Sequence record: ON529853.1
DNA: 64,000 nt
Reading direction: 5' to 3' (one strand)
Part shown: piece by piece, positions 1 through 23,996 of the stretch
Layout: the number at the start of each line of letters is the position of its first letter
Numbering within the stretch: the stretch's first letter is position 1
Notes under the pieces: model-generated
The model's database searches: none
Told to the model about the DNA's origin: nothing
The model's input: the letters and a program-made list of their open reading frames with translations, nothing else
Program-made: the position numbers and the translations under genes

Positions 1-308
1 GCGGGCGGGATGCGCCCGGCGGCGAGGTGAGGCCACGCCCACGCGAAGGCCTTCGCCGAGGGGGCGTCGGCGCCGATGTGGGCGCGGCGGCCATGCCGGA
101 ACGAATCGTCGGCGAAGATCGTGCCGAGGAAGGTGTAGTCGGATTCGTTGTCGGACCCGGTCAGGACCGACACGAACCAGATGCGGTCCTTGGCGCCCAC
201 GCGATAGGTGTAGCGGGCGCCGGTCGCCGCGCTGACCAGCGTGACGCGGGCGCGCCCGGCGAGCATGAAACGGCGGACGTTTTCGGCGGACATCTCGGCG
301 GCGGACAT
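1..308 (-). CDS. DUF6011-like phage protein, N-terminal part (runs off window)
   Basis: Own translation MSAAEMSAENVRRFMLAGRARVTLVSAATGARYTYRV...WFVSVLTGSDNESDYTFLGTIF; follows CtrA box 353-367. Confidence 0.55.
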   Translation of the reverse strand, partial: MSAAEMSAENVRRFMLAGRARVTLVSAATGARYTYRVGAKDRIWFVSVLTGSDNESDYTFLGTIFADDSFRHGRRAHIGADAPSAKAFAWAWPHLAAGRIPP

Positions 309-444
309 GGGGCGGCTCCGGTGGTTGACCGGTCCACCCTAGAGCCGATACGTTAACAAACCGTTAACGCCGCGACGGACGCCGCGCGTTAAGGTTAACG
401 GCGGGCGGGCGCGGAAGGCCGCCCGGCGAACCGGGCGGCGGGGA

Positions 445-954
445 TCACGGCGCCAGAGGATCAGGCGGCGGGATGATCTCGACATTGCGCCGGCCCTGCT
501 TGACGCGACCGATCTTGATTCGCTTCTCGACAGCGGCGCGCGCCCATTCATGGCGCGTGGTCTCGGCGGCGTGACGGCCCGTCTCATCGACGGCGCTATA
601 GATGGAATAGAGCAGGCCGAACAGCGCAACCTCCGGCATGGCCTTGACCGCCTCCAGCATCTCGCCGTTGTCGTAGGCCCCGGACACTTCCACGACGCGG
701 GTCCCCGAGCCGTGTTGCATCAGAATGTAAAAGGTCGATTTGCGGTCGCGGCGGCGTTCGCTTTCGCCTGTGCGTCGGACGGCCAGTTTGATGTCGTAGG
801 CCCGGTAACAGACGCCCGTGCCGGGCTTGCCATTGTCCGAACCCAGGATACGCATCTCGCGTTCCGGCAGGGGATGGCGCAGGACCTCGAAAGGCTCGAA
901 CGTGGTGTCGTCGGCGTAGCCCGATCCACGGGCGATGATGGCGCTTTTCAGCAT
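445..954 (-). CDS. hypothetical phage protein
   Basis: GGAGA RBS, own CtrA-box promoter. Confidence 0.8.
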   Translation of the reverse strand: MLKSAIIARGSGYADDTTFEPFEVLRHPLPEREMRILGSDNGKPGTGVCYRAYDIKLAVRRTGESERRRDRKSTFYILMQHGSGTRVVEVSGAYDNGEMLEAVKAMPEVALFGLLYSIYSAVDETGRHAAETTRHEWARAAVEKRIKIGRVKQGRRNVEIIPPPDPLAP

Positions 955-1008
955 GGGGCGTCTCCAGTTGCGATCCCGTATCCCTACAGGACGGAAGTTA
1001 ACAGGGGG

Positions 1009-1446
1009 TTAACCGGTCACGGAATCCGAGCGGTCGCGCAGGGCGTCGGCGTAGGTGTCGAACGGCTCCGATTCCGCCTCTTCCTCGCCGTCATACCAAT
1101 GGAACCGCTGCACGGCGTCCGCATCAGGCGTCGCGCCCGGATAGGTGCGCAGGAAGATTTGCAGGTCGTCCAGATCGTCGTCGTCGGGGTCCAGCGCCAG
1201 CGCCGGGGCGGCGGGAAGGGTCGGGACCACGCCGCGCGAATAGGCCTCGACGCAGACGCCGACGAAGGTCGAGATTTCGGTGGCCTGCCGCAGGAACAGG
1301 CGCTGATTGTCTTGGGGCAGGGCTTGGGCCACGGCCACGGTGAAGGCGTCGCCGCGCAGGCTCCAGACCAGTTCACTGAAGGTTTCGACGCCGTCGTCCA
1401 TATCGGCGTAACCGACGACGGTGTAAAAGGCGGGCGATTCAGCCAT
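1009..1446 (-). CDS. hypothetical acidic protein
   Basis: RBS and CtrA box; TAA stop lies inside next box. Confidence 0.8.
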   Translation of the reverse strand: MAESPAFYTVVGYADMDDGVETFSELVWSLRGDAFTVAVAQALPQDNQRLFLRQATEISTFVGVCVEAYSRGVVPTLPAAPALALDPDDDDLDDLQIFLRTYPGATPDADAVQRFHWYDGEEEAESEPFDTYADALRDRSDSVTG

Positions 1447-1628
1447 GGGGCTCTCCTGTTTCGTTGGGGATACCCTAGCCCGAAGAAGTTAACAATAGGT
1501 TAAGACCGCGAGGTTTCTTCGGGCGGGCGTTAACCTTAACACGGCGTTAACCTTAACGGCGGACGGGCAGGGGCGGCCCCGGCCTAGAGCCGGGGCGCCG
1601 GGGCGGCGTCATTCCGCCCCGTTCCCTG

Positions 1629-1826
1629 TCAGCCTTCGTCGGGCTGATAATCCGGGTCGGGATCGAAGCGACCGCAGAACGTGCGGCCCTCTGATTCCAT
1701 ACCGGGCTCAAAAGCCCGGATGACGTACAAGGCCCGGCCCACGGTGTTGAGGTTGAGCACCGCGACCGGGGCGCCGCCCCGGTTCGCCGTGCGTTGCGCG
1801 TCGCGCTTGACCTGATCGAGGGTCAT
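1629..1826 (-). CDS. hypothetical protein (MTLDQVKRDAQ...)
   Basis: In-frame ATG just after stop of 1829-2197. Confidence 0.65.
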   Translation of the reverse strand: MTLDQVKRDAQRTANRGGAPVAVLNLNTVGRALYVIRAFEPGMESEGRTFCGRFDPDPDYQPDEG

Positions 1827-1828
1827 GC

Positions 1829-2197
1829 TCAGCCCTCGAAACGGTCGTGGACCGAAACCGGGCCGCCGAAGCGCGGGCCGCCGAGACGTTCCACGGCTTC
1901 GTTGAAACGGCTGTCCGTCGTTCCGGCGTAGTTGCCGCCCGCCATCAGCCAGCGCGTGTCCATCTCGCCGGTGTCCGTCGCCGGGACGATCTTGACCGCG
2001 CCGCGCACGTTGCCCTTGACCAGATAGGCGGCGGGGCGCGACGGGTTGGGGTCGAACGGGCCGTCGACGTTGACCAGGGTCAGTTGCGCGACCTTGGACG
2101 ACACGCCGCCGTTGGTGCAGTCCACCGAGTCCAGCTTCAAAATGTCGCCCGGTTGGTCGGCGGCGCAGCGGCGGTAGATGGAAACGATCAGGCCCAT
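1829..2197 (-). CDS. conserved-looking phage hypothetical protein
   Basis: RBS and CtrA box; DCTNGGVSS...MAGGNY..TDSRF motif. Confidence 0.8.
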   Translation of the reverse strand: MGLIVSIYRRCAADQPGDILKLDSVDCTNGGVSSKVAQLTLVNVDGPFDPNPSRPAAYLVKGNVRGAVKIVPATDTGEMDTRWLMAGGNYAGTTDSRFNEAVERLGGPRFGGPVSVHDRFEG

Positions 2198-2270
2198 GGG
2201 GCTCTCCTTTGTTTGACCTCCACACCATAGCGTGAAGGTCTTAACAAGAGGTTAACGCCGGAAAGATTTT

Positions 2271-2438
2271 TCAGGCGGCGGAAAACAGCGCAGCGGTCGA
2301 GACGCCGCCCAGCAGGGCGCGGCGGAACGGGTCGAGCGCGAGCGCCGGGGCGGCCTTGGCCTTGCGGGCGCGCGGCTTGGGCGCGGCCTTCGCGGCGGCG
2401 GGCTTGCGGGCGCGGGGCGTCTTCGGGGTGTCGGTCAT
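2271..2438 (-). CDS. small basic Ala/Lys/Pro-rich protein with C-terminal RRALLG hydrophobic segment
   Basis: Own variant box at 2497; start MTDTPK. Confidence 0.55.
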   Translation of the reverse strand: MTDTPKTPRARKPAAAKAAPKPRARKAKAAPALALDPFRRALLGGVSTAALFSAA

Positions 2439-2597
2439 GGCGAGGCCTTTCGTTGGGGGTGAAGTCCAGAGCCCCCCCCAGCCTCGCACGGAGTCCTTAC
2501 CAAAGGATTAACGGGCCAGGCGCCGCCGGGCGGGCGTTAACCTTAACGGATCGGGCGGGACCGTTAACCACGGCGGGGGTCCGCCGTGGTCGGGAGG

Positions 2598-2936
2598 TCA
2601 GTTCACCCCGGCGATGATCGAGCAGTCGCCGTAGAACTTGCCTTGGAACGGGATGCAGTCGCCTTGCGGGGTGATGTGGTGCTCAATCCAGAACCGGTCG
2701 TCGCCCTCGACCTTGGAGCCGTGCGCGTTGCTGTAGCCCTTGGCTTCCCATTCGGCGATGACTTCGGGGAAGGCGGCGCGGAAGGCGTCGCGCTCCATGG
2801 CGAACTTGAGTTCGCTCATGTAGGTGATCTGGATATAGCGGAAGGGGCCGATGGTCGGGCCTTCGAATCCCCAGTCCTCCATGTTCTGATCGGCGTCGTC
2901 GCGGCCATGGAACAGGCGCAGATGAACGTCGGACAT
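2598..2936 (-). CDS. hypothetical protein
   Basis: GGAGA RBS before MSDVHLRLFHGR; CtrA box 2981. Confidence 0.8.
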   Translation of the reverse strand: MSDVHLRLFHGRDDADQNMEDWGFEGPTIGPFRYIQITYMSELKFAMERDAFRAAFPEVIAEWEAKGYSNAHGSKVEGDDRFWIEHHITPQGDCIPFQGKFYGDCSIIAGVN

Positions 2937-3115
2937 TGGTCGTCTCCTCTTTCGATACAGACCACTATAGAGGCGATTCGTTAACAAGGGGTTAACGCCG
3001 GGACGATTTTTCAGGCAGCGCGGGCGGGCGTTAACCTTAACAGCCCGTTAACCTTAACGACCGGTTAACGGCCCCGTTAACCATGGCGGGGTCGCCGCCA
3101 TGGCCGGGGGTCCGG

Positions 3116-3376
3116 TCAGGCCGCCGGGGGCGGCGGGGGCGGCGGGATCGGGTGGGCGCGGGCGAGGGTCTTGGCGGTCCACGCGTCCGGGGTCGAGAGG
3201 TCGTAGGCCTCGGCGAACAGGCGGGCGCAGTCCTGCACCGTCTCGCCCTTCAGGTGGTCTTCATACCAGCTACGCAGTTGGTCTTCATCAGCGCCCGCGT
3301 CGCGGTAGTCGATGCCGTAGCCCGCCAGCAGGGCGGCGTTGGCGGCGGCGAGCCAGAGTTCAAACGTGGGATACAT
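3116..3376 (-). CDS. hypothetical protein
   Basis: RBS and CtrA box 3423. Confidence 0.75.
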   Translation of the reverse strand: MYPTFELWLAAANAALLAGYGIDYRDAGADEDQLRSWYEDHLKGETVQDCARLFAEAYDLSTPDAWTAKTLARAHPIPPPPPPPAA

Positions 3377-3564
3377 CGGGCGTCTCTCCTTGTTCCGATG
3401 CTTAGATCATATCCGGCAGAAGTTAACAAGAGGTTAAGACCAGAAAGATTTTTCAGGGGCCGACCGGGGCGGCGTTAACCTTAATGGCTCTTAAGCTTTT
3501 GTTAAGGTTAACGGGCGGGGCCTGGAAATGGTTAACGGACGTTAACCACTCCCCTTAACCGTCC

Positions 3565-3849
3565 CTAGTTGGGACGGTCGTCGATGAACTCGATTTTCTT
3601 TTCCGTGGTGGCGATCAGGGCCGTGACGTCGGCGATGGCGTCATCCAGCTTGGCGGCGCCCTTGTAGGTCTTGCCGGTCCAGCCGCCGACCATCGCCAGC
3701 AGGTTCTTGGCGGTGTAGGCCCGGTTGACCTTCATGCCGATCTTGAGGGCGCGCAGGCCTTGGCGAACAACGATCATCTGGTAGCGGGCGATGGCCTCGC
3801 CGGTGTGGGTGACGGCGCCGTGTTCGGAGATGTGGACTTGATCGGTCAT
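3565..3849 (-). CDS. hypothetical protein
   Basis: CtrA box 3894. Confidence 0.75.
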   Translation of the reverse strand: MTDQVHISEHGAVTHTGEAIARYQMIVVRQGLRALKIGMKVNRAYTAKNLLAMVGGWTGKTYKGAAKLDDAIADVTALIATTEKKIEFIDDRPN

Positions 3850-4045
3850 GTCTGTGTTCCCTTGTTGGTGAGATCACTATAGCGGCCCGGTTCTTAACAA
3901 CAAGTTAAAATCGAAATAAATCGTGCCTAACGAAAAGGGTTAATTTTTCGGGGCCGGGCGTTAACCTTAACAAGAGGTTAACGGCTGTTAAGGTTAACGC
4001 CAGCGGGTCAGGCGAGACCGCCCCGGCGAACCGGGGCGGCGGGGG

Positions 4046-4669
4046 TCAGCCCAGTTGAATCGCGCCGTCGTCGGCGGTGTAGAGGTAGACTTCTTCGGGG
4101 TATTTTTGCGCGGCTTCCGTCAGGGCCTCGCCTTCCGCTTCGGGCCAGTCGCCGTCTTCCCAATAGCCGACGCCGCTGCGGGTCCGGGTCATGTAGAAGT
4201 CATAACCGGCTTGCTCCTGCACCGAACAGTTGACCGCGCGGACCTCGCCCGACGCGTAGGCCGCTTCCAAGGTGGCGGCGTTCTCGCGTTGGAAGCGTTC
4301 GCAATCCGCGACCATTTCGCGCAAGCCGTCCGGGTGAATCTCTTCCGGGCAAATCGTGTTGTCGCGGTCGTGGTCCGCGTTCGGGTGTCCGGTCGGATAC
4401 TCGGCGCCGTTGGAGGCGGCGGCGGCGATATAGCCGCGCGTGAACGGATCGCACGGCGTCAGGATCGACCAGGACTCGGCCTCATAGGCGGCGCGCGCCT
4501 CGGCGTAGGCCTCTTCGAGGGCGTCCACAACGGCGCGGGCTTCCGCGACCAGAGCGGCGGGTTCCGTGTGCGGATATTGCATCACCGTCAGGGCGGCGAT
4601 CTGCTGCGCCGTCAGGGGGCTATAGTCGGGGACCGTGGTTTCGGCGGTCAGCTTGGCGAGGGTCGTCAT
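4046..4669 (-). CDS. hypothetical protein (GYDFYMTR..GVGYW..GDW motif)
   Basis: GGAG RBS before MTTLAKL; CtrA box 4714. Confidence 0.75.
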   Translation of the reverse strand: MTTLAKLTAETTVPDYSPLTAQQIAALTVMQYPHTEPAALVAEARAVVDALEEAYAEARAAYEAESWSILTPCDPFTRGYIAAAASNGAEYPTGHPNADHDRDNTICPEEIHPDGLREMVADCERFQRENAATLEAAYASGEVRAVNCSVQEQAGYDFYMTRTRSGVGYWEDGDWPEAEGEALTEAAQKYPEEVYLYTADDGAIQLG

Positions 4670-5041
4670 GGGGTTGCTCCCGTTGATGTGCGAGCATATT
4701 GCACGCCAAGGTCTTAACAACAAGTTAACGCCGCGCAGATTTTTCGGCGGGCGGGCGGGCGTTAAGGTTAATGCGAAAGGCTCGCAAGGGGCGGCGTTAA
4801 CCTTAACAGAATCGTCCGAAAATTAACCATGCCCGTTGACGTTTTCTTAACGACTCGGCGCTAGGCTCAAGGGTTCCATAGCCACGCCTCGCGCCGGGTC
4901 CGACCCCCCGCGCGCGGTGTCACGCGCTCGCCTCGACCGGGGCGGGGCGCCCGGCCACGCGCCCCGACATCGGGAGGCGCGAGCCCGCCCGGCTGGGCGG
5001 TCGATCGGTCATGCCGGCGACCGCCAGGGCGGGGGTGCGTC

Positions 5042-5185
5042 GAATCGAAACGGCGTCAGGTCAAGTCGGCCGGCGTCAAAACGAAACGGCGTCAGGTCAA
5101 GTTCGCCCGCGTCAAATCTAAATGGCGTCAAGTCAAGTTCGCCAGCGTCAAATCGAAACGGCGTCAGGTCAAGTTCGCTCGCGTC
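5042..5185. repeat. Repeat family A, left copy: four tandem 36-bp units rich in CGTCAA/CGTCAG
   Basis: Units start 5042, 5078, 5114, 5150. Confidence 0.9.
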
Positions 5186-5265
5186 AAGTTTGATCCGCCA
5201 GGACCTGAGCGAAAACGAAGACGCCCGGCGCGCATGAAAGCGGCCGGGCGTCAGGGGTCATCCGT

Positions 5266-5334
5266 TCAGAAACAGAGGCCCACAATCATGAGGGCGAAAA
5301 CGATCTTGGACGCGGAACAGAGTTTATCGAGCAT
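5266..5334 (-). CDS. 22-aa hydrophobic peptide MLDKLCSASKIVFALMIVGLCF
   Basis: AAGGAAG RBS, downstream hairpin 5221-5251, paralogue at 23063. Confidence 0.6.
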   Translation of the reverse strand: MLDKLCSASKIVFALMIVGLCF

Positions 5335-5358
5335 ATTCAGGGGCTTCCTTCTACTAAG

Positions 5359-5502
5359 GAGTCACGCCCGGTAGTAAACGTGACAGGTCGTGGGAACGCT
5401 ACAGAGAGAAATCTCGCGAGTCATCGTCTGTGTGTAACGTGACTGAACTATTTGTTAATCCGGTCGGGGGATTGGAGTCACGCCCGGTGGGAAACGTGAC
5501 TC
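5359..5502. repeat. Repeat family B, left copy: three dyads GAGTCACG-N11/12-CGTGAC(TC)
   Basis: Start 5359, 5418, 5475; the last is a perfect inverted repeat. Confidence 0.85.
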
Positions 5503-5515
5503 CGGGGTTTTGGCG

Positions 5516-15223: not shown

Positions 15224-15225
15224 GG

Positions 15226-16883: not shown

Positions 16884-16946
16884 GGCGTCTCCTCCATGGG
16901 GTGATCTCGATTGAGACCACCCTACAGGACAGAAGTTAACAAGAGG

Positions 16947-17429: not shown

Positions 17430-17585
17430 GGGGCGTCTCCCTTGTTCGATGATCCCTTATAGCCACAATGTCTTAACAAAAGGTTAATGCCATGACAAGG
17501 GCGTGCGGGCGTTAACCTTAATGTGGCGTTAAGGTTAACGCGACCGGGTCGCAAGAAAGGTCCCCGGCCGAAGCCGGGGACGGGG

Positions 17586-18050
17586 TCAGGCGGCGTCCTT
17601 GTATTCGGGGAATTTGGCGATCAGGGCGGCGACCGTCTCCTCGACCGACTTCATGTTGGGGAAGTAGTGGTCGGCCGGATCGGCGAAGTCCAAGGCGAAG
17701 TCGCAGATGAAGGGGATCGCGTCCCACTGCCAGCAGCGGCAGCATTCGAACCAGTCGCGCCCGTCCTGATTGAAGGCGATCCACACCGCCTCGAAATAGG
17801 GGCCAAGGCGCATCATCACGTCGCGCATCTCGGCGGAGCCGTAGCCGTCCAAGGCGTCGTCCCAGCGCGCGTAGGCGGCCCGCCGCTCCTTGTCCTTGGC
17901 GCGCTGGTTGCGCGAATCGACGGACAGGGCGACATACTCCCACGCCGCCATGGACGCGTGGATCGCGGCAGACGGATAGCTGGCGCGCATCTTGCGATAC
18001 TTCTTGGCCGTGGGCGTGGGCTTGAACGTGGTGCGGTGCTTGTAGGGCAT
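17586..18050 (-). CDS. hypothetical protein
   Basis: GGAGA RBS before MPYKHRT; CtrA box 18095. Confidence 0.75.
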   Translation of the reverse strand: MPYKHRTTFKPTPTAKKYRKMRASYPSAAIHASMAAWEYVALSVDSRNQRAKDKERRAAYARWDDALDGYGSAEMRDVMMRLGPYFEAVWIAFNQDGRDWFECCRCWQWDAIPFICDFALDFADPADHYFPNMKSVEETVAALIAKFPEYKDAA

Positions 18051-18205
18051 GGGCGTCTCCTCCCGGTTGATCCTGAGACCATAGACCCTAGAAGTTAACA
18101 AGAGGTTAACGCCGTGAACGTCATGCGCCGTTAAGGTTAACGCCCGCGTGCGGGGAAAGCCGCGCCGCCGGGGGAGACAACCCGGCGGCGCGGCAGGCGG
18201 CGACC

Positions 18206-18763
18206 TCAGACGTTGTAGTCGCCGTATTCCGTCCCGCACTGGACGATTTCGCCGGTGGCGTCGTCCCAGTGGATGCGGTTCAGGCGCAGGATGCCGCCCC
18301 TGACGTGGGTCCATTCCACCTGACAGGTGATCATGTCGTCGAAGATCGCCTTGGGCTCGCCGTATTGCGACCAGTCGATGCCGCCGCGCTGATCGACCTC
18401 GCCCTTGGCGTCGGACAGGATGCGGGCCAGCACGTCGGGCATGAGGCGACCCGGCGCCCTCTTGGTCCCATAGGAGCCGCGCCCGCCGTTCGTCATGTTG
18501 CTGAACTTTGTGAAGTCCTGCACATAGTTCTCGACCTCGACCGACCCCGGCTGGGGCAGGTCATACATCAGGTCCGACAGAATGTCGCCGACCGGATAGG
18601 ACTCCGTGGCGGCGTCCAGCCTGTCGGCCAGTTCGGCCCCCTCGTCGCCCGGCTGGACGTAGAGTTCGGCGCCGTCGGCGCGGCGCGCCAGGACGCCGCC
18701 CATCGAATCACGCCAGGCCTTGAACCCGCCGTCGTCGCTCTCCCAGGTCGGCGCCTTGCTCAT
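18206..18763 (-). CDS. hypothetical protein
   Basis: ATGA coupling with upstream gene. Confidence 0.75.
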   Translation of the reverse strand: MSKAPTWESDDGGFKAWRDSMGGVLARRADGAELYVQPGDEGAELADRLDAATESYPVGDILSDLMYDLPQPGSVEVENYVQDFTKFSNMTNGGRGSYGTKRAPGRLMPDVLARILSDAKGEVDQRGGIDWSQYGEPKAIFDDMITCQVEWTHVRGGILRLNRIHWDDATGEIVQCGTEYGDYNV

Positions 18764-19176
18764 GCCTCGACCTCCTCTTCGACTTCGGCATAGGCGCTGG
18801 GGATGCGCTTGTTCGTGTGATCGCAGAACAGATCGGGGTCCTCATAGTTGATCTGGACGCTGTCGAGGCGCCAGCCGGTCGAGGCGTCGTGCAGGTGGTC
18901 GTCACAGACCAGCGTGAAGTTCGCCCGCACCGCGTCGAACGACAGGGCGACGCCGTCGCGGGTGGCGAAATAGAGCGGATAGCCGCCGAGGTCCGTGTAA
19001 GGCCCGGCGCGCAGCGCGGCCTTGACCTGCTGAAGCGCCTTGACCGGATCGGTGTCGAAGCGGGCGACCGATCCCTTATAGGCGGCGCGCAGCGGCTTGG
19101 CGGTTCCCCAGCCGGGCTGGCGGGTGTCGTAGAGGGCGCCATCGGACGAGGCGAAAAGGTGGGCGGGCAATGTCAT
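18760..19176 (-). CDS. conserved-looking phage hypothetical protein (GGYPLYF...INYED.DLFCDH)
   Basis: RBS and CtrA box 19222. Confidence 0.8.
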   Translation of the reverse strand: MTLPAHLFASSDGALYDTRQPGWGTAKPLRAAYKGSVARFDTDPVKALQQVKAALRAGPYTDLGGYPLYFATRDGVALSFDAVRANFTLVCDDHLHDASTGWRLDSVQINYEDPDLFCDHTNKRIPSAYAEVEEEVEA

Positions 19177-19345
19177 GGGGTCTCCTCCCGTTGCTGACCC
19201 TCCCTGTATCGCATGAAGTTCTTAACAACAAGTTAACGACGTGATTTATTTCCGGCGGCGGGCGGCGGGCGTTAACCTTAACGCGCTGTTAAGGTTAATG
19301 CGAGCGGGTCGCGGAAGGGGCGCCCGGCCGAAGCCGGGCGCCGGT

Positions 19346-19486
19346 TCAGGCGGCGGTGCGGTAGCGGGTGTGGCCCCGGTCCCAGGTGTAGGCCTCGACC
19401 GATCCGCTCGGGTGGGGGTTGTTCCACCACTTGACGCCCCGGCGCGCGGCGGCGTAGCCCGCGCCTTCGATCTGGGCGGCGTCCAT
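19346..19486 (-). CDS. Rmf-like (ribosome modulation factor fold) 46-aa protein
   Basis: MDAAQIEGAGYAAARRGVKWWNNPHPSGSVEAYTWDRGH resembles GY.A..G....NPY......W..GW; TGATG coupling. Confidence 0.5.
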   Translation of the reverse strand: MDAAQIEGAGYAAARRGVKWWNNPHPSGSVEAYTWDRGHTRYRTAA

Positions 19487-19731
19487 CAGGCGCCGATCCG
19501 GTGGGCCGGGCAGAAGCCCGACACGACCTTGACGCGACCACGCTTGAAACCGGGGCGCAGGGCGCGCGCCGAGCGTTCGGCGTCGGCGGTCTTCATGTGA
19601 CCGCAGGCGCAGGACGCGCCGGGGTCGCGGGTCTGGGCCTCGCGCACCTTGTCGGCGCCGGCCTGTGTGCCGAGCCAGCCGCAGAAGGGCTCGCCGCCGA
19701 CCGTGATGTGAGCGGGTTGGGTGTTAATCAT
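19486..19731 (-). CDS. hypothetical Cys/His protein
   Basis: Operon position. Confidence 0.65.
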   Translation of the reverse strand: MINTQPAHITVGGEPFCGWLGTQAGADKVREAQTRDPGASCACGHMKTADAERSARALRPGFKRGRVKVVSGFCPAHRIGA

Positions 19732-20260
19732 CGTCGCCGTCCTCCTCGTCCTGGGGCATATCCTCGGCGTCGGTCAGGCCGGTGACGGTCCACCAGCCGA
19801 GGCCTTGAGCGTCACCCGACGTGTAGCCTTCGCGGACCATCGTCGCCATCGCTTCCAACGCGTCGGCCACGTCCTCGTCGGTCATGGCGTCGTGACCGTT
19901 GAAGGTGAAGGTCGGCTTGACCGTCACCGGGGCGGGGGTCGATTCGCTGTTGATCTCTTCATGATGCGTCACGCTCTCGGCGACGATCTCAGCGAGGTCG
20001 TCGCCGACCAGCATCCAGTCTTCGGCGTCGCCGTCCGGGTCATAGACGACGAAGGCGCCGGGGTATTGCGCGACGCGGGCGCGCCAGCCGTTGCGCACCT
20101 CGGCGTGTTTCTCGGCGATCCAGTCGGCGCCCATATGGGTTGCGCCCTCGTAGGCTCTGACCGGGAAATTGGTCGTCATCAGTTCGCTGCGGGTGGCGAC
20201 GCGCAGGCCCCACACGTCGAGGGCGGTCTGGGCTTGCGTCAGGGTCATGGCGTCGGGCAT
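19724..20260 (-). CDS. hypothetical protein
   Basis: GGAGG RBS before MPDAMTL. Confidence 0.75.
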   Translation of the reverse strand: MPDAMTLTQAQTALDVWGLRVATRSELMTTNFPVRAYEGATHMGADWIAEKHAEVRNGWRARVAQYPGAFVVYDPDGDAEDWMLVGDDLAEIVAESVTHHEEINSESTPAPVTVKPTFTFNGHDAMTDEDVADALEAMATMVREGYTSGDAQGLGWWTVTGLTDAEDMPQDEEDGDDD

Positions 20261-20270
20261 CGGGGCCTCC

Positions 20271-20468
20271 TTAGAGATGGATCGCGGCGTCGAACGCCTG
20301 GGATTGCAGTTTCTTGGCGGCTTCGGCCTCGGCGGGGTAGAGCCGGGCCAGGCCGTCAAAGCGTTCTTTCTGATGCGAGCGCTCGCCCTCGGCGGCGGTC
20401 ATGTGCATGACCTCGCCCCACAGGTGGGCCATTTCGAGGATCAGGACAGAGCGGCGGGAAGCGTTCAT
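20271..20468 (-). CDS. hypothetical protein
   Basis: RBS and CtrA box 20510. Confidence 0.75.
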   Translation of the reverse strand: MNASRRSVLILEMAHLWGEVMHMTAAEGERSHQKERFDGLARLYPAEAEAAKKLQSQAFDAAIHL

Positions 20469-20520
20469 GGCGGTCTCCTTGTTGACCTCGCCACCCTAGC
20501 AGCGAGGTCTTAACAAGAGG

Positions 20521-20766
20521 TTAACAGCGGCGGAGCATTTCACGCATCAGGGCTTCCTCGTTGCGGGCGATGTCCAGCGCGGCGCGGTCGTGGCCTTGCT
20601 CATGCGCCTGCTTGGCCTGCTGTCGGCAGATGTCCTGGCGCTTGCGGATGTCAGCCTCCGACAGGGTGCGGAACAGGGCGTCGGCCTCCTGATCGACCTT
20701 GACGGTCCAGTGCTGCTGCGATTCGTCGTCGGCGCGGAGATGGGCGGGGAAGTAGGCGTCGGCCAT
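20521..20766 (-). CDS. hypothetical protein
   Basis: GGAGG RBS; stop inside next box. Confidence 0.75.
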   Translation of the reverse strand: MADAYFPAHLRADDESQQHWTVKVDQEADALFRTLSEADIRKRQDICRQQAKQAHEQGHDRAALDIARNEEALMREMLRRC

Positions 20767-20774
20767 GGGTCCTC

Positions 20775-21086
20775 CTAAAGGTTCTGGTCGCGGACGCGGG
20801 CGAGCGCGGTGTGGACGGCGGGGAGCAGGGTCGGCGTCTGGCCGCTCATCCAGAACTCGGTCGCGTCGCCCTCGCCCATCTGATGCGAGACGCCGTAGAA
20901 GCAGGCGCCGCGCGGGGTGTCGTCATTGGGGCATTGGACCCAGACCGGCAGGTCTTGGCCGTCGCGGGTGAGGACCAGCGCGTCATCCGTGCTGCCGTCG
21001 TCGGCGACCTCATAGCGGGCCGACAGGCCGGCAGCGGTCAGCAGGGTCATGGCGGCGGTCCAGGGGGCGCCTTGGGGAAGGGGCAT
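20775..21086 (-). CDS. hypothetical protein
   Basis: RBS and CtrA box 21128. Confidence 0.75.
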   Translation of the reverse strand: MPLPQGAPWTAAMTLLTAAGLSARYEVADDGSTDDALVLTRDGQDLPVWVQCPNDDTPRGACFYGVSHQMGEGDATEFWMSGQTPTLLPAVHTALARVRDQNL

Positions 21087-21221
21087 TGCGATCTCCTTTG
21101 TGCTGACCCTGTTCTAGCAATGATTCGTTAACAAGAGGTTAACGTCCTGCGCGGTGGTCCGGGGCGTTAACCTTAACAGGGTCAGGCCGGAAAACGCCCC
21201 GGCCGAAGCCGGGGCGCAGGG

Positions 21222-22112
21222 TCAGCCGACCCGCTCCTTCTTGAGGTGGTAGGACCGACCGTGGGTCATCAGGGAGCGGAACCCGCCCAACCGGGTCTCG
21301 CCCGGCGCCGGGGTCACGACATAGACCGGATCGAGGAAGTCGTCGTTCCAGCGGATCACGTCGTCGAACGCCTGCGGCGTGTGCAGCACGACCTTATAGG
21401 GTTCGCCTTCGGGCGCGACCAGATCGGTGGTGTGGTCCTCGTCGCCCTTGTAGCCGAACACCGACAGGACCGCGACCGGCAAGCCGTCGTCGAGCGTCGA
21501 GAGGTCTTGCAGGGCGCGGGCCTCGGCCAGCCGCTTGTGCGGCTCATAGAGGGCGCAGTCGCGCTTGAGCAGGTCAGCGCGCAAGGCGACGACACGCTGG
21601 GGCGTCAGGTCCAGAGACGCGCAGGCCCCGATGACGACGCCGTAGATGAAGCCGAGTGCGTGCTGCGTGAGCGACACCATGCCGTCCATTCCCGCCGTCG
21701 CGACCTCCTGATTTTTCAGGCCGAACGCCGCCAGGGCGCCGGCGACGTCGCGGCACTCCTGCCGGGTCGGGGCGGTCTTGGCCTCGATGTGGAGGCGCAG
21801 GGTGTCGCGGGCCTTCATCAGGTCCACAATCGCCAGCGACAGGCCGGTGTAGCGTCCATCTTCGACCGGGGCGGGCTTGGGCTTCGGGGCCGGGTAGGTC
21901 TCGACGCACAGCAGGCGGGCGCGGGTCTCCTCGACCGTATAGACCTCGACCTGATAGGCCATGCCGAGCGCCACGCGCAGTTCGTTGCGGATCGCCAGAC
22001 CGGCCTCGGGGTCGGTGGTGGTCAGGCGCAGTTCGCCGATCCGGCGGTCCTCGCCCTGGGCGGGATGGCGGCGCGACAGTTCGAGGCGCAGGTCGTAGGG
22101 GGCGTCGGTCAT
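21222..22112 (-). CDS. hypothetical protein
   Basis: RBS and CtrA box 22155. Confidence 0.8.
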   Translation of the reverse strand: MTDAPYDLRLELSRRHPAQGEDRRIGELRLTTTDPEAGLAIRNELRVALGMAYQVEVYTVEETRARLLCVETYPAPKPKPAPVEDGRYTGLSLAIVDLMKARDTLRLHIEAKTAPTRQECRDVAGALAAFGLKNQEVATAGMDGMVSLTQHALGFIYGVVIGACASLDLTPQRVVALRADLLKRDCALYEPHKRLAEARALQDLSTLDDGLPVAVLSVFGYKGDEDHTTDLVAPEGEPYKVVLHTPQAFDDVIRWNDDFLDPVYVVTPAPGETRLGGFRSLMTHGRSYHLKKERVG

Positions 22113-22165
22113 CAGGGTCTCCCGTGGTTGAGCGTCCGGTATAGCCGGAAGGTCTTAACAAACCG

Positions 22166-22537
22166 TTAACGGCGGTCTTCGCTGAGGCGGGCGAGTATTT
22201 CGTCGTTCGTCATCGTGTCCAGCAGGTCTTGCACCTGACGGGCCTTTTCGTCCTCGACCGCCTGAGCCGCCGCCTTGGCGCGGCGATGCTCGGCCAGCGC
22301 CGCCTTGCCCGCTTCGGTCGTCTCCGGGTCGATGGTCATGTAAAGGCTGACCTCGCGGCCCTGCCGATCCACGAAGGTCAGGCTTCCAGACGGACGCACC
22401 TTGACGGTGAACATCGCCTTGACCAGCCGCTCGGCGGTCTCTTGACCGAAGTCGCCGCCGAAGCTGCCGCCCGCCGCCTTGAGGGTGTTGTCGCTCTTGA
22501 GGCGGGTGTGATAGCCGATGTTCTTGTAGGTGTGCAT
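22166..22537 (-). CDS. hypothetical protein
   Basis: GGAG RBS before MHTYKN; stop inside next box. Confidence 0.75.
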   Translation of the reverse strand: MHTYKNIGYHTRLKSDNTLKAAGGSFGGDFGQETAERLVKAMFTVKVRPSGSLTFVDRQGREVSLYMTIDPETTEAGKAALAEHRRAKAAAQAVEDEKARQVQDLLDTMTNDEILARLSEDRR

Positions 22538-22547
22538 GGGGCGCTCC

Positions 22548-22886
22548 TTAGAAGGGAATGTCGTCGTCGAACGCGGGCGTCGTGACATAGGTCTGGGCGC
22601 GGCGGGCGCGGCGGGCGGCGTCCATCTCGGCGCGCTCCTCGTCCGTCGCGCTCCAATACTCGTCGTCTTCCGGGTGCGCGCCGGGCTCGCCGCGATAGTG
22701 CGGGTTCTTCACCCAAGCGTCGAACGGGTGCAGCAGCCACTCCACGTCAGGCGCCTCGAAGCCTTCCGACTGAGCGAACCCCGACAGGGCCAGGCTCATG
22801 TATTCGCCCTGGCTCAGCGACTCCATCGCCAGAGCGTCTTCCTTTTCGCGGCGGGCCTCTTCGGCCATTTCGATCACATCGCGCAT
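22548..22886 (-). CDS. hypothetical protein (NPHYRGEPGAHPE motif)
   Basis: GGAGA RBS; CtrA box 22928. Confidence 0.75.
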   Translation of the reverse strand: MRDVIEMAEEARREKEDALAMESLSQGEYMSLALSGFAQSEGFEAPDVEWLLHPFDAWVKNPHYRGEPGAHPEDDEYWSATDEERAEMDAARRARRAQTYVTTPAFDDDIPF

Positions 22887-23062
22887 CGGCGTCTCTCCTT
22901 GTGAGCCCCCTTTATGCCAGACATAAGTTAACAACAAGTTAACGCCGACGCTTTTCTGCATTTTTCTTCAGGCGGCGGCTGCGGGCGTTAACCTTAACAG
23001 CCTGTTAAGGTTAACGGGCGGGCGGGGCCTGGGAAACGGCGTCCCGTAACGGGACGCCTCTC

Positions 23063-23131
23063 CTAGAAGGTGAGCATGATGACCAGCAGGGCCAGAAAGA
23101 GGCGGGAGGCGCCGGCCAGCTTGTCGATCAA
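23063..23131 (-). CDS. 22-aa hydrophobic peptide (M)IDKLAGASRLFLALLVIMLTF
   Basis: TTGA overlap; aligns without gaps to the 5266-5334 peptide. Confidence 0.55.
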   Translation of the reverse strand: MIDKLAGASRLFLALLVIMLTF

Positions 23132-23598
23132 GACTCGCTGTCCGCTTTCATCGCCGCGCACAGGGTTTCGACCAGCCGCTTGTGACGCGCCAGAGCGGCG
23201 GGGTCGGCGCGCTCGCCTTGGAAGGGGACCAGCACCAGAGGTGTGGCCGAGGGGTCCAGCGCCCAGAAGATTTCCGTCTCGCCGTCCGTCATCTGGTAGG
23301 TATAGACGTTCAGGTCGGCGGGGGCGTGGTCGAGGAAATAGACGCGCCCGTTGAACTTGACGTCGAAGGGCTGATCCGGCGTCGCCAAGTCGATCTCGGC
23401 CAGCACGGCGTCGCGCACGGCGTCAATCGGGTGAACGCCGTCTTCGCCGATTTCATCAGGACGGGATTCGGCCTCGGCCTCCGCGTCGCGCTTGATGTCC
23501 TCGACCACGGCGGCGCGCGCCTCCTCCCAAGTCGCACAGGCGCTGGGCTCCTCGTCGGGCATGAAGCCCGAGACATTCGATCCGGTCACATAAGGCAT
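23128..23598 (-). CDS. hypothetical protein
   Basis: GGAGA RBS before MPYVTGS; CtrA box 23646. Confidence 0.75.
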   Translation of the reverse strand: MPYVTGSNVSGFMPDEEPSACATWEEARAAVVEDIKRDAEAEAESRPDEIGEDGVHPIDAVRDAVLAEIDLATPDQPFDVKFNGRVYFLDHAPADLNVYTYQMTDGETEIFWALDPSATPLVLVPFQGERADPAALARHKRLVETLCAAMKADSES

Positions 23599-23689
23599 CG
23601 GGGTCTCCTTGTTGGTTCCGATGGTGCAGACTACCCGACAAGGTCTTAACAAAAAGTTAACAGCGGCGCAATCGCTTTTCTTCGCGACG

Positions 23690-23704
23690 TTAACCTCTTG
23701 TTAA
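23690..23704 (+). promoter_or_regulatory. CtrA box in plus orientation (divergent promoter)
   Basis: TTAACCTCTTGTTAA upstream of 23751. Confidence 0.85.
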
Positions 23705-23750
23705 CTTCCGTGTGGGATAAGGGACAGGTCAACAACACAGGAGATCGCCG

Positions 23751-23996
23751 ATGGGCGAAGTCATCCCGCACCGCGTCTGGCGCAACACCCGGACCGAACG
23801 CACCGCTGGCGTGTTCGGCGCCGTGCCTTGGGTCTCGGACGCGGAGAAGTCCGACTGGGAACTGGTCACGGTCGGCTGGACCGTTCGCCACCCGGACGGC
23901 ACGACCGGGGTCGGTCGCTTCGCCTTCGAGACGAAGGACGAGGCGCAGGCTTGGGTCGATGAGAATCCCAACTTCCCCGGCATGAGCCAAGGCTAG
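23751..23996 (+). CDS. hypothetical protein, only plus-strand gene of the array
   Basis: GGAGA RBS, box 23690, hairpin at 24002-24030. Confidence 0.8.
   Translation: MGEVIPHRVWRNTRTERTAGVFGAVPWVSDAEKSDWELVTVGWTVRHPDGTTGVGRFAFETKDEAQAWVDENPNFPGMSQG

What the first reader, a model, noticed from the sequence alone, without database searches (positions are those of the whole stretch)
1..23996. Cassette-like array of ~32 CtrA-box transcription modules built on one repeated regulatory scaffold
Seen: 31 minus-strand boxes and one plus-strand box (TTAA-N7-TTAA, spacer mostly CCTCTTG). Each sits at a fixed distance from a -10-like element and RBS and drives one to a few unrelated small genes. The full junction reads hairpin, GTTAAGGTTAAC, box, -10, TCAAC leader, GGAGA, ATG. 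Some junctions are near-identical over ~55 bp (8937-8990 vs 9875-9928; CCCTACAGGACAGA.GTTAACAAGAGGTTAA at 16314 and 16920). Known: this is the binding consensus of the alphaproteobacterial cell-cycle regulator CtrA, and CtrA sites have been reported in Caulobacter phages; T4-type PeSL cassettes shuffle genes via repeated promoter/stem-loop units. Inference: a plug-in array of early genes, gated by host CtrA~P (swarmer/G1 state), that gains and loses cargo by recombination between scaffolds.
Basis: partly seen in the sequence, partly recalled or inferred. Interest (0 to 1): 0.85.

Follow-up and report, generated by a model that had tools for sequence, protein, structure and literature searches.

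The report
CtrA-box promoter array in jumbo phage
The left third of this window is part of a 38.6-kb block of a Brevundimonas jumbo phage in which about 50 small transcription units of unknown-function genes all use the same promoter built around the binding site of the host cell-cycle regulator CtrA. This kind of arrangement is already described for related Caulobacter phages, but here it is far larger, is built on a shuffling-prone repeated scaffold, and is replaced by an ordinary promoter in a sister phage clade.

Summary
TTAA-N7-TTAA occurs 46 times in the window against 0.01 expected, and every hit lies within 353-25874.

The window is Brevundimonas phage vB_BpoS-Bambus, positions 1-64000. 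The array wraps the record start: 73 of the genome's 74 boxes sit in one 38.6-kb block.

In the window, 30 minus-strand boxes and 1 plus-strand box lie 41-55 nt upstream of an ATG, each followed by a GCTA-type -10 element and a GGAGA ribosome-binding site. They drive 42 ORFan genes. Ten further hits in 1-23996 come from a second motif, TTAACCTTAAC, placed just after terminators.

The promoter matches phiCbK gp005 and gp018, which are published as CtrA~P-bound and CtrA-dependent (Mascolo 2022). The CtrA reading is therefore well supported, but it is already known in kind.

The cassette idea is partly supported. Four module indels among close relatives have junctions inside scaffold repeats. Others ignore the scaffold, and synteny breaks are not significantly enriched at promoter junctions.

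One result appears to be new. Sister phage Gurke infects the same host and has an orthologous array. It keeps the terminator and 12-mer scaffold but uses TTGACA promoters at 45 of 49 junctions.

Timing (swarmer-stage gating) is untested.

The parts
1..23704 (-). Window part of the promoter-module array. The whole array runs from record 335,363 across the record start to about 23,704. It holds 30 minus-strand units with 42 genes, plus one divergent plus-strand unit.
23646..23660 (-). CtrA-box promoter driving gene 23128-23598
   Evidence: box end 47 nt from ATG
23690..23704 (+). CtrA-box promoter (TTAACCTCTTGTTAA) driving plus-strand gene 23751-23996
   Evidence: 46 nt from ATG
22928..22942 (-). 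CtrA-box promoter driving 22548-22886 and 22166-22537
   Evidence: 41 nt
22155..22169 (-). CtrA-box promoter driving 21222-22112. Its first TTAA holds the TAA stop of 22166-22537.
   Evidence: 42 nt
21128..21142 (-). CtrA-box promoter driving 20775-21086 and 20521-20766
   Evidence: 41 nt
20510..20524 (-). CtrA-box promoter driving 20271-20468, 19724-20260, 19486-19731 and 19346-19486. The upstream gene's stop codon lies in the box.
   Evidence: 41 nt
19222..19236 (-). CtrA-box promoter driving 18760-19176 and 18206-18763
   Evidence: 45 nt
18095..18109 (-). CtrA-box promoter driving 17586-18050. This module is absent from Domovoi and Kabachok.
   Evidence: 44 nt
17473..17487 (-). CtrA-box promoter driving 16947-17429
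   Evidence: 43 nt
16936..16950 (-). CtrA-box promoter driving 16341-16883, with the upstream stop codon in the box. One crossover partner of the deletion seen in Domovoi and Papperlapapp.
   Evidence: 52 nt
16330..16344 (-). CtrA-box promoter driving 15661-16284, with the upstream stop codon in the box
   Evidence: 45 nt
15650..15664 (-). CtrA-box promoter driving 15226-15600, 15059-15223 and 14747-15058, with the upstream stop codon in the box. The other crossover partner.
   Evidence: 49 nt
14566..14580 (-). CtrA-box promoter driving 13913-14524
   Evidence: 41 nt
13803..13817 (-). CtrA-box promoter driving 13291-13752 and 13184-13291
   Evidence: 50 nt
13173..13187 (-). CtrA-box promoter driving 12412-13122, with the upstream stop codon in the box
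   Evidence: 50 nt
12290..12304 (-). CtrA-box promoter driving 11539-12234
   Evidence: 55 nt
11438..11452 (-). CtrA-box promoter driving 10791-11396 and 10375-10794
   Evidence: 41 nt
10364..10378 (-). CtrA-box promoter driving 10005-10319, with the upstream stop codon in the box
   Evidence: 44 nt
9912..9926 (-). CtrA-box promoter driving 9063-9866
   Evidence: 45 nt; junction 49/54 identical to the one at 8974
8974..8988 (-). CtrA-box promoter driving 8201-8929
   Evidence: 44 nt
8086..8100 (-). CtrA-box promoter driving 7289-8041
   Evidence: 44 nt
7269..7283 (-). CtrA-box promoter driving 6740-7219
   Evidence: 49 nt
6601..6615 (-). CtrA-box promoter driving 5516-6547
   Evidence: 53 nt
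4714..4728 (-). CtrA-box promoter driving 4046-4669
   Evidence: 44 nt
3894..3908 (-). CtrA-box promoter driving 3565-3849
   Evidence: 44 nt
3423..3437 (-). CtrA-box promoter driving 3116-3376
   Evidence: 46 nt
2981..2995 (-). CtrA-box promoter driving 2598-2936
   Evidence: 44 nt
2241..2255 (-). CtrA-box promoter driving 1829-2197 and 1629-1826
   Evidence: 43 nt
1489..1503 (-). CtrA-box promoter driving 1009-1446
   Evidence: 42 nt
998..1012 (-). CtrA-box promoter driving 445-954, with the upstream stop codon in the box
   Evidence: 43 nt
353..367 (-). CtrA-box promoter driving an unannotated 136-aa gene. The gene starts at 308 and runs off the window start, wrapping the record.
   Evidence: 44 nt
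1..308 (-). 5' part of that unannotated gene. Homologs of 92-98% identity occur in all four close relatives.
389..398 (.). TTAACCTTAA/TTAAGGTTAA 12-mer core after a terminator
1530..1556 (.). pair of 12-mer cores, which creates the non-promoter TTAA-N7-TTAA hit at 1536
2537..2546 (.). 12-mer core
3031..3057 (.). pair of 12-mer cores (hits at 3037 and 3054)
3475..3511 (.). pair of 12-mer cores (hit at 3491)
3961..3997 (.). pair of 12-mer cores (hit at 3967)
4762..4806 (.). pair of 12-mer cores
6654..6663 (.). 12-mer core
8145..8154 (.). 12-mer core
9010..9019 (.). 12-mer core
9950..9959 (.). 12-mer core
11483..11492 (.). 12-mer core
12355..12364 (.). 12-mer core (hit at 12344)
13849..13858 (.). 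12-mer core (hit at 13838)
14601..14610 (.). 12-mer core
17512..17538 (.). palindromic pair GTTAACCTTAAC-N5-TTAAGGTTAAC. Downstream junction of the 583-bp module indel.
18131..18140 (.). 12-mer core. Upstream junction of the 583-bp module indel (15-bp repeat GCGTTAACCTTAACG).
19272..19298 (.). palindromic pair. Insertion point of a 608-bp promoter-plus-gene module in Domovoi and Kabachok (16-bp repeat).
21167..21176 (.). 12-mer core
22988..23014 (.). palindromic pair (hit at 22994)
23032..23063 (-). G+C-rich terminator-like hairpin after 23128-23598
21194..21217 (-). terminator-like hairpin after 21222-22112
   Evidence: -23.6 kcal/mol for the 3' UTR
19319..19342 (-). terminator-like hairpin after 19346-19486
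18159..18194 (-). terminator-like hairpin after 18206-18763
17560..17581 (-). terminator-like hairpin after 17586-18050
14632..14663 (-). terminator-like hairpin after 14747-15058
13879..13907 (-). terminator-like hairpin after 13913-14524
12382..12410 (-). terminator-like hairpin after 12412-13122
11510..11533 (-). terminator-like hairpin after 11539-12234
9977..10000 (-). terminator-like hairpin after 10005-10319
9031..9062 (-). terminator-like hairpin after 9063-9866
8171..8194 (-). terminator-like hairpin after 8201-8929
6685..6716 (-). terminator-like hairpin after 6740-7219
4017..4040 (-). terminator-like hairpin after 4046-4669
3524..3553 (-). hairpin after 3565-3849
3079..3105 (-). hairpin after 3116-3376
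2566..2591 (-). hairpin after 2598-2936
1575..1598 (-). hairpin after 1629-1826
418..439 (-). hairpin after 445-954
24052..24078 (.). two 12-mers (box hit at 24058) after the plus-strand gene's hairpin
24250..24400 (.). non-coding 32-bp x 4.2 repeat of GTTAACCTTAAC plus ATGGTTAAC. It gives three full boxes (24263, 24295, 24327) and several TTAACCAT half-sites, and none is a promoter module.
25854..25935 (.). three more 12-mers and one box (25860) next to the 3' end of the terminase gene

Best explanation
What it is. Window 1-23,704 is about two thirds of a 38.6-kb fast-changing block of small genes in a phiCbK-like jumbo siphovirus (Brevundimonas phage Bambus). The block lies between the portal/protease genes and the terminase genes. 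It corresponds in make-up to the long terminal repeats of Caulobacter phages phiCbK and CcrSC.

The units. About 71 ORFan genes are organised in about 50 short transcription units. Each unit reads:
- a promoter in which a full CtrA box (TTAAC-N5-GTTAA) lies about 38 to 24 nt upstream of the start site, in place of a normal -35 element;
- 10-11 nt further on, a Caulobacter-type -10 element (G)CTA(G/T)(G/A)(G/A);
- a shared leader (A/G)TCAAC..GGAGAC.CCC-ATG;
- one to four genes;
- then one of two endings: a G+C-rich hairpin, a small GCGACC.G.TCGC hairpin and one or two TTAACCTTAAC units, or the next box placed directly on the stop codon.

How it works (inferred). Host RNA polymerase needs phosphorylated CtrA bound at the box to fire these promoters. 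Expression of the whole block would then be tied to the host cell-cycle and motility regulator.

A side effect of the repeated scaffold (partly shown). The many near-identical scaffold copies are substrates for homologous or short-homology recombination. This deletes, inserts and swaps promoter-plus-gene modules, as T4-type promoter/stem-loop cassettes do. It can also spread one promoter type through the array.
For: Shown here.
- Motif excess and confinement to one block.
- Fixed box, -10, ribosome-binding-site and ATG geometry in 49 promoters.
- All 41 annotated genes have their highest G+C at codon position 3 (mean 0.87), so they look like real coding sequence.
- No paralogs and no Pfam or PADLOC family.
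- The same promoter, down to the spacer bases, occurs in the phiCbK terminal repeat.
- A 47-nt class-A probe finds 20-23 places in each of the five Bambus-clade phages, 2-8 in phiCbK-like phages (mostly annotated terminal repeats), and 1 in Gurke and Kikimora.
- Four module indels have junctions inside scaffold repeats, including a hybrid promoter in Domovoi and Papperlapapp.
- Promoter subfamilies share bases in non-critical spacer positions yet sit in front of unrelated genes: 17 pairs reach 80% identity or more, against 0 in shuffles.
- Of 28 orthologous Bambus-Gurke gene pairs, 18(+1) have a CtrA-box promoter in Bambus and a TTGAC(A/G) promoter in Gurke, and none the reverse.

From the literature.
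- CtrA~P binds the phiCbK gp005 and gp018 promoters, and mutating the box abolishes the shift. [quoted passage not shown] - The exact 16-mer box is enriched in Alphaproteobacteria: about 48 of the 80 genome hits listed.
Against: - No binding or transcription data exist for this phage or this host. The CtrA dependence is carried over from phiCbK promoters tested in Caulobacter.
- The -10 element and start site are assigned by consensus only. The generic sigma-70 scan finds nothing.
- Terminators have weak U-tracts.
- Recombination role: at least five clean indels do not use the scaffold repeats. These are an in-frame 309-bp indel inside 10791-11396, loss of 19724-20260 inside an operon, and small promoterless genes added at stop codons.
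- Synteny breaks are not significantly commoner at promoter junctions.
- Terminal-repeat status cannot be read from a circularised assembly.
Confidence: 0.62

Rival explanations
1. The repeated scaffold is kept alike only because each copy must work as a promoter or terminator. Gene gain and loss would then come from ordinary illegitimate recombination filtered by selection for intact genes, as proposed for lambdoid phages. The scaffold would have no special recombination role.
For: - Synteny breaks are not significantly enriched at promoter junctions: odds ratios 0.9-2.6, p at least 0.10.
- Several indels and ORF-precise replacements end at start or stop codons, or inside genes, without scaffold homology.
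Against: - Four module indels have both ends in the same repeated element. Two share 15-16-bp exact repeats of the 12-mer, and one left a hybrid promoter.
- The 12-mer units cover only a few percent of the block.
- Promoter subfamilies share spacer bases in front of unrelated genes.
- The array-wide switch of promoter type between clades is hard to get one site at a time.
Confidence: 0.3
2. The boxes act mainly as a sink for CtrA. About 73 full sites plus about 47 12-mers per genome, multiplied by replication, would draw CtrA~P away from the host origin and regulon. Promoter activity would be secondary.
For: - Thirteen boxes in the window are not in promoter position.
- A 32-bp repeat of boxes and TTAACCAT half-sites lies in non-coding DNA at 24250-24400.
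- The same motif vocabulary fills the CtrA-site-rich gap of phage vB_BsubS-Delta, part of which binds CtrA~P.
Against: - Thirty-one of the 41 boxes in 1-23996 keep an exact distance to a -10 element, a ribosome-binding site and an ATG. A sink would not need this.
- The homologous phiCbK promoters drive reporters.
- The two roles do not exclude each other.
Confidence: 0.12
3. The box is read by a phage-encoded or virion-delivered factor rather than by host CtrA.
For: - Two phage clades on the same host strain use different promoter types, which could reflect a clade-specific factor.
- Domovoi's ortholog of 22166-22537 is annotated as winged helix-turn-helix.
Against: - phiCbK promoters of the same build work in uninfected Caulobacter and need CtrA.
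- No response-regulator homolog is annotated in the Bambus genome; only a GcrA homolog is.
- 22166-22537 has no Pfam hit even at E=10 and no meaningful PDB sequence hit. Gurke also has an ortholog of it.
Confidence: 0.07

Closest known systems
CtrA-site clusters in the terminal repeats of phiCbK-like phages ('LPEG' signature; Mascolo et al. 2022, PMC9437464)
   Same: - Same phage subfamily (Dolichocephalovirinae).
- Same skewed, intergenic placement of CtrA sites in front of small genes of unknown function.
- Same promoter build as gp005 and gp018, almost base for base.
   Different: - Scale: about 50 promoters and 73 full boxes in 38.6 kb, against 3 exact boxes (about 9 near-boxes) in the 10.3-kb phiCbK repeat.
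- Different host genus.
- The composite scaffold, stop-codon-in-box junctions, scaffold-bounded indels and the clade-level promoter switch are not mentioned in the parts of that paper read here.
- The Bambus isolation paper mentions neither CtrA nor promoters.
PeSL cassettes of T4-type phages (Arbiol et al. 2010, PMC2839356; Comeau et al. 2014, PMC4122927)
   Same: - Repeated composite terminator stem-loop plus promoter motifs.
- They flank non-conserved ORFan genes in fast-changing regions.
- Indels and replacements between close relatives have junctions in the motif.
   Different: - Unrelated phages and unrelated sequence.
- The promoter here depends on a host activator (CtrA) instead of being a strong sigma-70 promoter.
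- An extra TTAACCTTAAC element is present.
- Mini-circles were not tested.
- Many indels here do not use the motif.
Host CtrA-activated promoters of Caulobacter with a site at -35, and pilA with extra upstream sites (Rijal et al. 2024, PMC11264516)
   Same: - A single full box overlaps the -35 position.
- In long junctions, extra TTAA-rich units lie 30-90 nt upstream, as in pilA.
   Different: - The phage copies are far more uniform.
- The upstream 12-mers keep a fixed distance to the preceding terminator (start 43-54 nt after the stop codon in most junctions), not to the promoter (30-62 nt).
[quoted passage not shown]
   Same: It uses the same words as window 24050-24400: GTTAAGGTTAA, GTTAACCTTAAC and ATGGTTAA.
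   Different: Delta is an unrelated 87-kb phage with one gap region, where CtrA represses. It has no array of promoter modules.

Membership tests
CtrA-activated promoter (CtrA box at -35) | Full site TTAA-N7-TTAA(C) | tested here: met
   All 49 promoter-proximal boxes have both TTAA halves. C follows the first half in 48 of 49, G precedes the second in 48 of 49, and C follows the second in 31 of 49.
CtrA-activated promoter (CtrA box at -35) | Box overlaps the -35 position at a fixed distance from a Caulobacter-type -10 element (GCTANAWC; consensus from my own knowledge of Malakooti et al. 1995) | tested here: met
   The CTA triplet lies at +25 to +27 from the box start in 32-43 of 49 promoters. 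There is no separate -35 element. The TTGTTAA-9 nt-GCTAGAAC spacing is shorter than the TTGACAC-14 nt-CCTAGAAG of Gurke. Start sites were not mapped.
CtrA-activated promoter (CtrA box at -35) | Binding of phosphorylated CtrA | not testable with these tools
   Shown only for near-identical phiCbK gp005 and gp018 promoters (PMC9437464).
CtrA-activated promoter (CtrA box at -35) | Transcription lost when CtrA is inactivated | not testable with these tools
   Shown for phiCbK gp005 and gp018 in strain LS2195.
LPEG phage signature (Mascolo et al. 2022) | Strongly skewed positional distribution of CtrA sites along the genome | tested here: met
   73 of 74 boxes lie in 11% of the genome.
LPEG phage signature (Mascolo et al. 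2022) | Sites are intergenic and promoter-proximal | tested here: met
   All 46 window hits are intergenic or overlap only a stop codon.
LPEG phage signature (Mascolo et al. 2022) | Location in a direct terminal repeat or gap region | tested here: inconclusive
   The record is circularised, so the repeat boundaries are unknown. The scaffolds match those in the annotated terminal repeats of phiCbK, CcrSC and others.
PeSL-type regulatory cassette | Repeated composite terminator stem-loop plus promoter between non-conserved small genes | tested here: met
   Nineteen long junctions in the window read hairpin, 12-mer, promoter. The cargo genes are ORFans. This is an analogy, not homology.
PeSL-type regulatory cassette | Indels or replacements between close relatives with breakpoints in the motif | tested here: inconclusive
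   Four events meet this. At least five clean indels do not. The adjacency test is not significant.
PeSL-type regulatory cassette | Strong activator-independent sigma-70 early promoter | tested here: not met
   The Bambus promoters lack a -35 hexamer at the right spacing. The Gurke and CcrSC versions of the scaffold do have TTGACA.
PeSL-type regulatory cassette | Excised mini-circles | not testable with these tools
   Needs lysate DNA or raw reads.
Integron-like cassette array (considered because of the palindromic unit at the 3' end of modules) | Promoterless cassettes, one common promoter, an adjacent integrase and attC sites | tested here: not met
   Most units carry their own promoter. The only sizeable gene annotated 'integrase' lies about 170 kb away, at record 195,586-196,260.

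The most novel reading that the evidence does not exclude
The junction scaffold is a convertible regulatory module. Within one phage subfamily, whole arrays of about 50 promoters have been switched between a CtrA-dependent type (Bambus clade, phiCbK) and an activator-independent UP-element/TTGACA type (Gurke/Kikimora, CcrSC). The terminator and 12-mer part, the leader and many cargo genes stayed the same through the switch. The likely route is copy-and-spread recombination between scaffold copies. Bambus and Gurke infect the same host strain. They would therefore be a natural matched pair for testing whether tying a phage's terminal-region genes to the host cell cycle ('lytic deferment') pays off.
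Probability: 0.45. Interest if true: 0.75.

Novelty: new variant of a known kind. Interest (0 to 1): 0.55.

Why it matters
Phage use of the host cell-cycle regulator CtrA was proposed in 2022 from a handful of tested promoters. This genome carries that logic to about 50 promoters and about 70 genes, roughly a tenth of a 348-kb genome. That would make it the strongest predicted case of a phage handing a whole gene class to a host developmental regulator.

The sister clade on the same host has orthologous genes behind ordinary promoters. It offers a ready-made comparison for asking what CtrA gating buys the phage.

The scaffold-bounded indels extend the T4 'mobile regulatory cassette' idea to an unrelated phage group and to an activator-dependent promoter.

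None of this changes the basic, already published picture. All functional statements still rest on sequence.

Tried and rejected
- Timing of phiCbK gp005/gp018 expression. I looked in the published infection RNA-seq (PMC10462132 and PMC10688885). The phage sheets are not in the stored supplement text. No timing evidence was obtained.
- Host sites. A scan of one genome per species with the exact 16-mer box gave single hits enriched in Alphaproteobacteria. In two Brevundimonas chromosomes the box is followed by a sigma-54-like GGCAC-N5-TTGG. The downstream ORFs had no informative Pfam hit, so this gave no link to a known CtrA-regulon gene.
- IMG/VR. The scan for the exact box gave nine single hits and no arrays.
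- Cargo function. There were no Pfam matches at threshold, no PADLOC hits, and only 'unknown function' PHROGs.
- Tandem duplication as the source of near-identical neighbouring junctions. This is rejected, because the neighbouring genes show no similarity.
- A phage-encoded winged-helix regulator in the array (22166-22537). No sequence support was found.
- Known RNA families in 1-27000. None were found.
- The generic sigma-70/terminator scan is uninformative for this high-G+C phage.
- Helical phasing between the 12-mer and the box. The distance is not fixed (30-62 nt). The 12-mer tracks the terminator instead.
- An integron-like reading is rejected (see membership test).
- Technical limit. Scripts could read only the first locus fetched between script calls. 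The middle of the Bambus genome was therefore scanned with the pattern tool, not by script.

Full report
**Identity and extent**

The first 24 kb of the window is 100% identical to Brevundimonas phage vB_BpoS-Bambus (ON529853.1), positions 1-24000. This is a 348,100-bp siphovirus of the Dolichocephalovirinae, the phiCbK group, isolated on B. pondensis LVF1.

TTAA-N7-TTAA occurs 46 times in the window against 0.01 expected. Every hit lies in 353-25874.

I fetched the rest of the genome. It holds 74 hits in all, and 73 lie in one block: record 335,363-348,100 plus 1-25,874, which is 38.6 kb. All 47 exact GTTAAGGTTAAC 12-mers lie in the same block. The finding's start at base 1 is therefore a window edge. 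A 136-aa gene runs across the record start (window 1-308), is unannotated, and has its own box at 353.

**Anatomy**

The hits fall into two classes.

Class A is a promoter.
- There are 30 minus-strand copies and 1 plus-strand copy in the window, and 49 minus-strand copies in the whole block.
- The 3' end of the box lies 41-55 nt from an ATG.
- The profile reads (c/t)G-TTAAC-cTcTTG-TTAA-(c/g)..cT....gCTAg. A loosely conserved (A/G)TCAAC, then GGAGA(C), then ATG follow.
- There is no separate -35 hexamer. The box lies where a -35 would be.

Class B is the unit TTAACCTTAAC.
- It occurs in either orientation, often as the palindrome GTTAACCTTAAC-N5-TTAAGGTTAAC.
- There are 28 cores in 1-23996, 9 in 24000-26200 and 1 in the other 38 kb of the window.
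- It accounts for the 10 non-promoter hits inside the finding.
- It sits right after a G+C-rich hairpin and a small GCGACC.G.TCGC hairpin, starting 43-54 nt after the stop codon in most junctions.
- Its distance to the next box varies (30-62 nt). It therefore belongs to the 3' end of a unit rather than to the promoter.

Junctions come in two forms.
- Nineteen are long (133-846 nt): hairpin, 12-mer(s), box.
- Eight are short (52-63 nt). In these the first TTAA of the box contains the TAA stop codon of the upstream gene and there is no terminator.
- Two more are short, with the stop 5-15 nt before the box.

The 42 genes of the window part look like real coding sequence, with G+C at codon position 3 the highest in all 41 annotated ones (mean 0.87). 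They have no paralogs among themselves. None has a Pfam or PADLOC family, and the only PHROG hits are of unknown function.

**What the box is**

The terminal repeat of phiCbK carries the same promoter.
- gp005 reads TTAACGGTTTGTTAAcatatcggcgccagggt.
- gp018 reads TTAACGGTTTGTTAAcccctggccctctagggt.
- gp020 reads TTAACCTCTTGTTAAcaccccccggctatggt.
- Six further junctions have a one-mismatch box followed by cttctggcctCTAGGGT, and some show the same stop-in-box arrangement.
- The Bambus box at 353 differs from gp005 at 4 of 32 positions.

Mascolo et al. 2022 showed that CtrA~P shifts gp005 and gp018 probes, and that mutated sites do not shift. [quoted passage not shown] They also reported that CtrA sites concentrate in the terminal repeats of phiCbK-like phages, in front of genes of unknown function, with turnover of sites after rearrangements.

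The CtrA reading is therefore well founded by homology, and it is already published in kind. A 47-nt class-A probe finds 20-23 places in each of Bambus, Marchewka, Papperlapapp, Domovoi and Kabachok. It finds 2-8 in phiCbK-like phages, mostly inside annotated terminal repeats, and only 1 in Gurke and Kikimora. The exact 16-mer is also enriched in alphaproteobacterial chromosomes, at about 48 of the 80 hits listed.

The class-B palindrome is more widespread.
- It has 14-40 places per genome in the Bambus clade, in Gurke/Kikimora and in the Bertelyvirus group (CcrSC, CcrBL9 and others), again in terminal repeats.
- It has single copies in unrelated 86-kb Brevundimonas phages. One is at the start of the vB_BsubS-Delta record, in the intergenic DNA upstream of DELTA_1.
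- Mascolo et al. describe a large CtrA-site-rich intergenic region in Delta. Their DELTA_120 probe from it binds CtrA~P, and CtrA represses there.

Class B is therefore probably a CtrA-binding element too. That is an inference.

**A promoter switch between sister clades**

Gurke (ON529850) infects the same host strain. It has the same block between the portal/protease genes and the terminase genes, and 35 of its 69 ORFs have homologs in the Bambus block.

Its junctions keep the hairpin, the GCGACC..TCGC hairpin, the 12-mer and the leader caacaacGGAGACacccATG. The promoter, however, is an A/T-rich stretch (tttttctgaaaaagagg), then TTGACAc, then 14 nt, then cCTAGAAGg. This holds at 45 of 49 junctions.

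Among 28 orthologous gene pairs, 18(+1) have a CtrA-box promoter in Bambus and a TTGAC(A/G) promoter in Gurke, and none the reverse. CcrSC's 23.9-kb terminal repeat is also of the TTGACA type and carries 12-mers.

The promoter module of the scaffold thus differs by clade while the rest of the scaffold and many genes are shared. I found no mention of this in the papers read.

**Test of the cassette idea**

I compared the block in the four close relatives (87-98% DNA identity where alignable). Gene-order maps show much turnover. Of the 41 annotated window genes, about 11 lack a homolog in at least one relative. Several positions hold unrelated ORFs. Neighbouring orthologs range from 55% to 100% identity.

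Four clean promoter-plus-gene indels have both junctions in scaffold repeats.
- A 376-bp module in Domovoi is inserted at the ribosome-binding site and ATG (GGAGACCCCC) of 13913-14524.
- A 1,254-bp deletion in Domovoi and Papperlapapp lies between the promoters at 15650 and 16936 and leaves a hybrid promoter.
- A 608-bp module in Domovoi and Kabachok is inserted at 19283-19317, flanked by the 16-bp repeat CGCGTTAACCTTAACG.
- Module 17541-18125 is missing from Kabachok and Domovoi, with the 15-bp repeat GCGTTAACCTTAACG at both ends.

Two further events abut a 12-mer or box without shared homology.

Other events ignore the scaffold.
- A 309-bp in-frame indel lies inside 10791-11396.
- Loss of 19724-20260 runs from start codon to start codon inside an operon.
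- A 292-bp C-terminal extension occurs at 19341/19356.
- Two small promoterless genes are added at stop codons.
- Many ORF-precise replacements end within 0-5 nt of the start and stop codons.

A gene-adjacency test gives no significant excess of synteny breaks at promoter-bearing junctions (Bambus odds ratio 2.6, p=0.10; the others are lower).

Promoters fall into subfamilies that share bases at positions with no obvious role and that precede unrelated genes. The 49/54-identical junctions at 8937-8990 and 9875-9928 are one example. This points to copying or conversion of scaffolds.

My reading is that scaffold copies do recombine and account for some module gain and loss, as with T4 PeSLs. They are not the only route.

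**Timing**

Nothing here shows when the array is expressed. Published work says that promoters with a single CtrA site at -35 fire in early-to-mid predivisional cells. Mascolo et al. propose that such phage genes wait for that stage. The phiCbK RNA-seq tables that might decide this are not in the stored text.

**Neighbouring control region**

Beyond the divergent plus-strand gene lies 2.2 kb of non-coding DNA (24000-26170), next to the terminase gene. It is packed with repeats.
- 12-mers.
- An A/T-rich stretch.
- A 32-bp x 4.2 repeat with full boxes and TTAACCAT half-sites.
- GCGTCAAAT, nine exact copies.
- GAGTCACG motifs.
- 25/49-bp GGGTCCC repeats.

The same GCGTCAAAT and GAGTCACG words recur in the 846-nt gap at 4670-5515. 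GGGGACCCTG repeats also lie in the first kilobase of the phiCbK genome. This region looks like an origin, packaging or genome-end region. I did not pursue it.

**Verdict**

The shuffling part is partly supported. The clade-level promoter switch is the most interesting new point.

Noticed in passing
window 24000-26170: A 2.2-kb non-coding region lies between the array and the terminase gene. It holds an A/T-rich stretch (24190-24245), a 32-bp x 4.2 repeat of boxes plus TTAACCAT half-sites (24263-24396), nine exact GCGTCAAAT copies in 16-bp repeats (24408-24623), five GAGTCACG motifs and 25/49-bp GGGTCCC repeats (25600-25810). It looks like an origin, packaging or genome-end region.
   Followed up: partly
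window 4670-5515: An 846-nt gap has no annotated gene. It holds a 36-bp x 4.2 repeat (5037-5187) and shares the words GCGTCAAAT and GAGTCACG with 24400-25300. Gaps at the same place exist in Marchewka, Papperlapapp, Domovoi, Kabachok and Gurke.
   Followed up: partly
window 6260-6415: A 24-bp x 6.5 repeat with GGGGACCCTG lies inside the annotated gene 5516-6547, whose orthologs differ in length. The same motif is repeated in non-coding DNA at 25600-25810, near record 341,030-341,110, and in the first kilobase of phiCbK.
   Followed up: partly
window 1-308 (continues before the window start): An unannotated 136-aa gene is split by the record start. It has its own box at 353 and homologs of 92-98% identity in all four close relatives.
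   Followed up: yes
window 2271-2438: This annotated small gene has no box upstream and no homolog in the four close relatives. It follows a hairpin and a 12-mer, so it may be read through or may not be a gene.
   Followed up: no
L002 37200-41000 (record 335,300-339,100): Five or six of the leftmost units carry a conserved GGGATTGGCC word in the leader between the -10 element and the ATG. The window units lack it.
   Followed up: no
record 134,131-134,679 (outside the window): The phage encodes a homolog of GcrA, the host's other cell-cycle regulator, as phiCbK does.
   Followed up: no
L104 6532-6600; L066 2890-2957: In two Brevundimonas chromosomes the identical 16-mer box is followed about 45 nt later by GGCAC-N5-TTGG, a sigma-54-like promoter. 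The downstream genes were not identified.
   Followed up: partly
L017 6939-7010 (Gurke); record 346,460 region (Bambus): Mixed junctions exist. One Gurke junction has a class-A-like box (TTTACCTCTTGTTAA). One Bambus junction has TTGACA four bases upstream of its box. These may be leftovers of the promoter switch.
   Followed up: no
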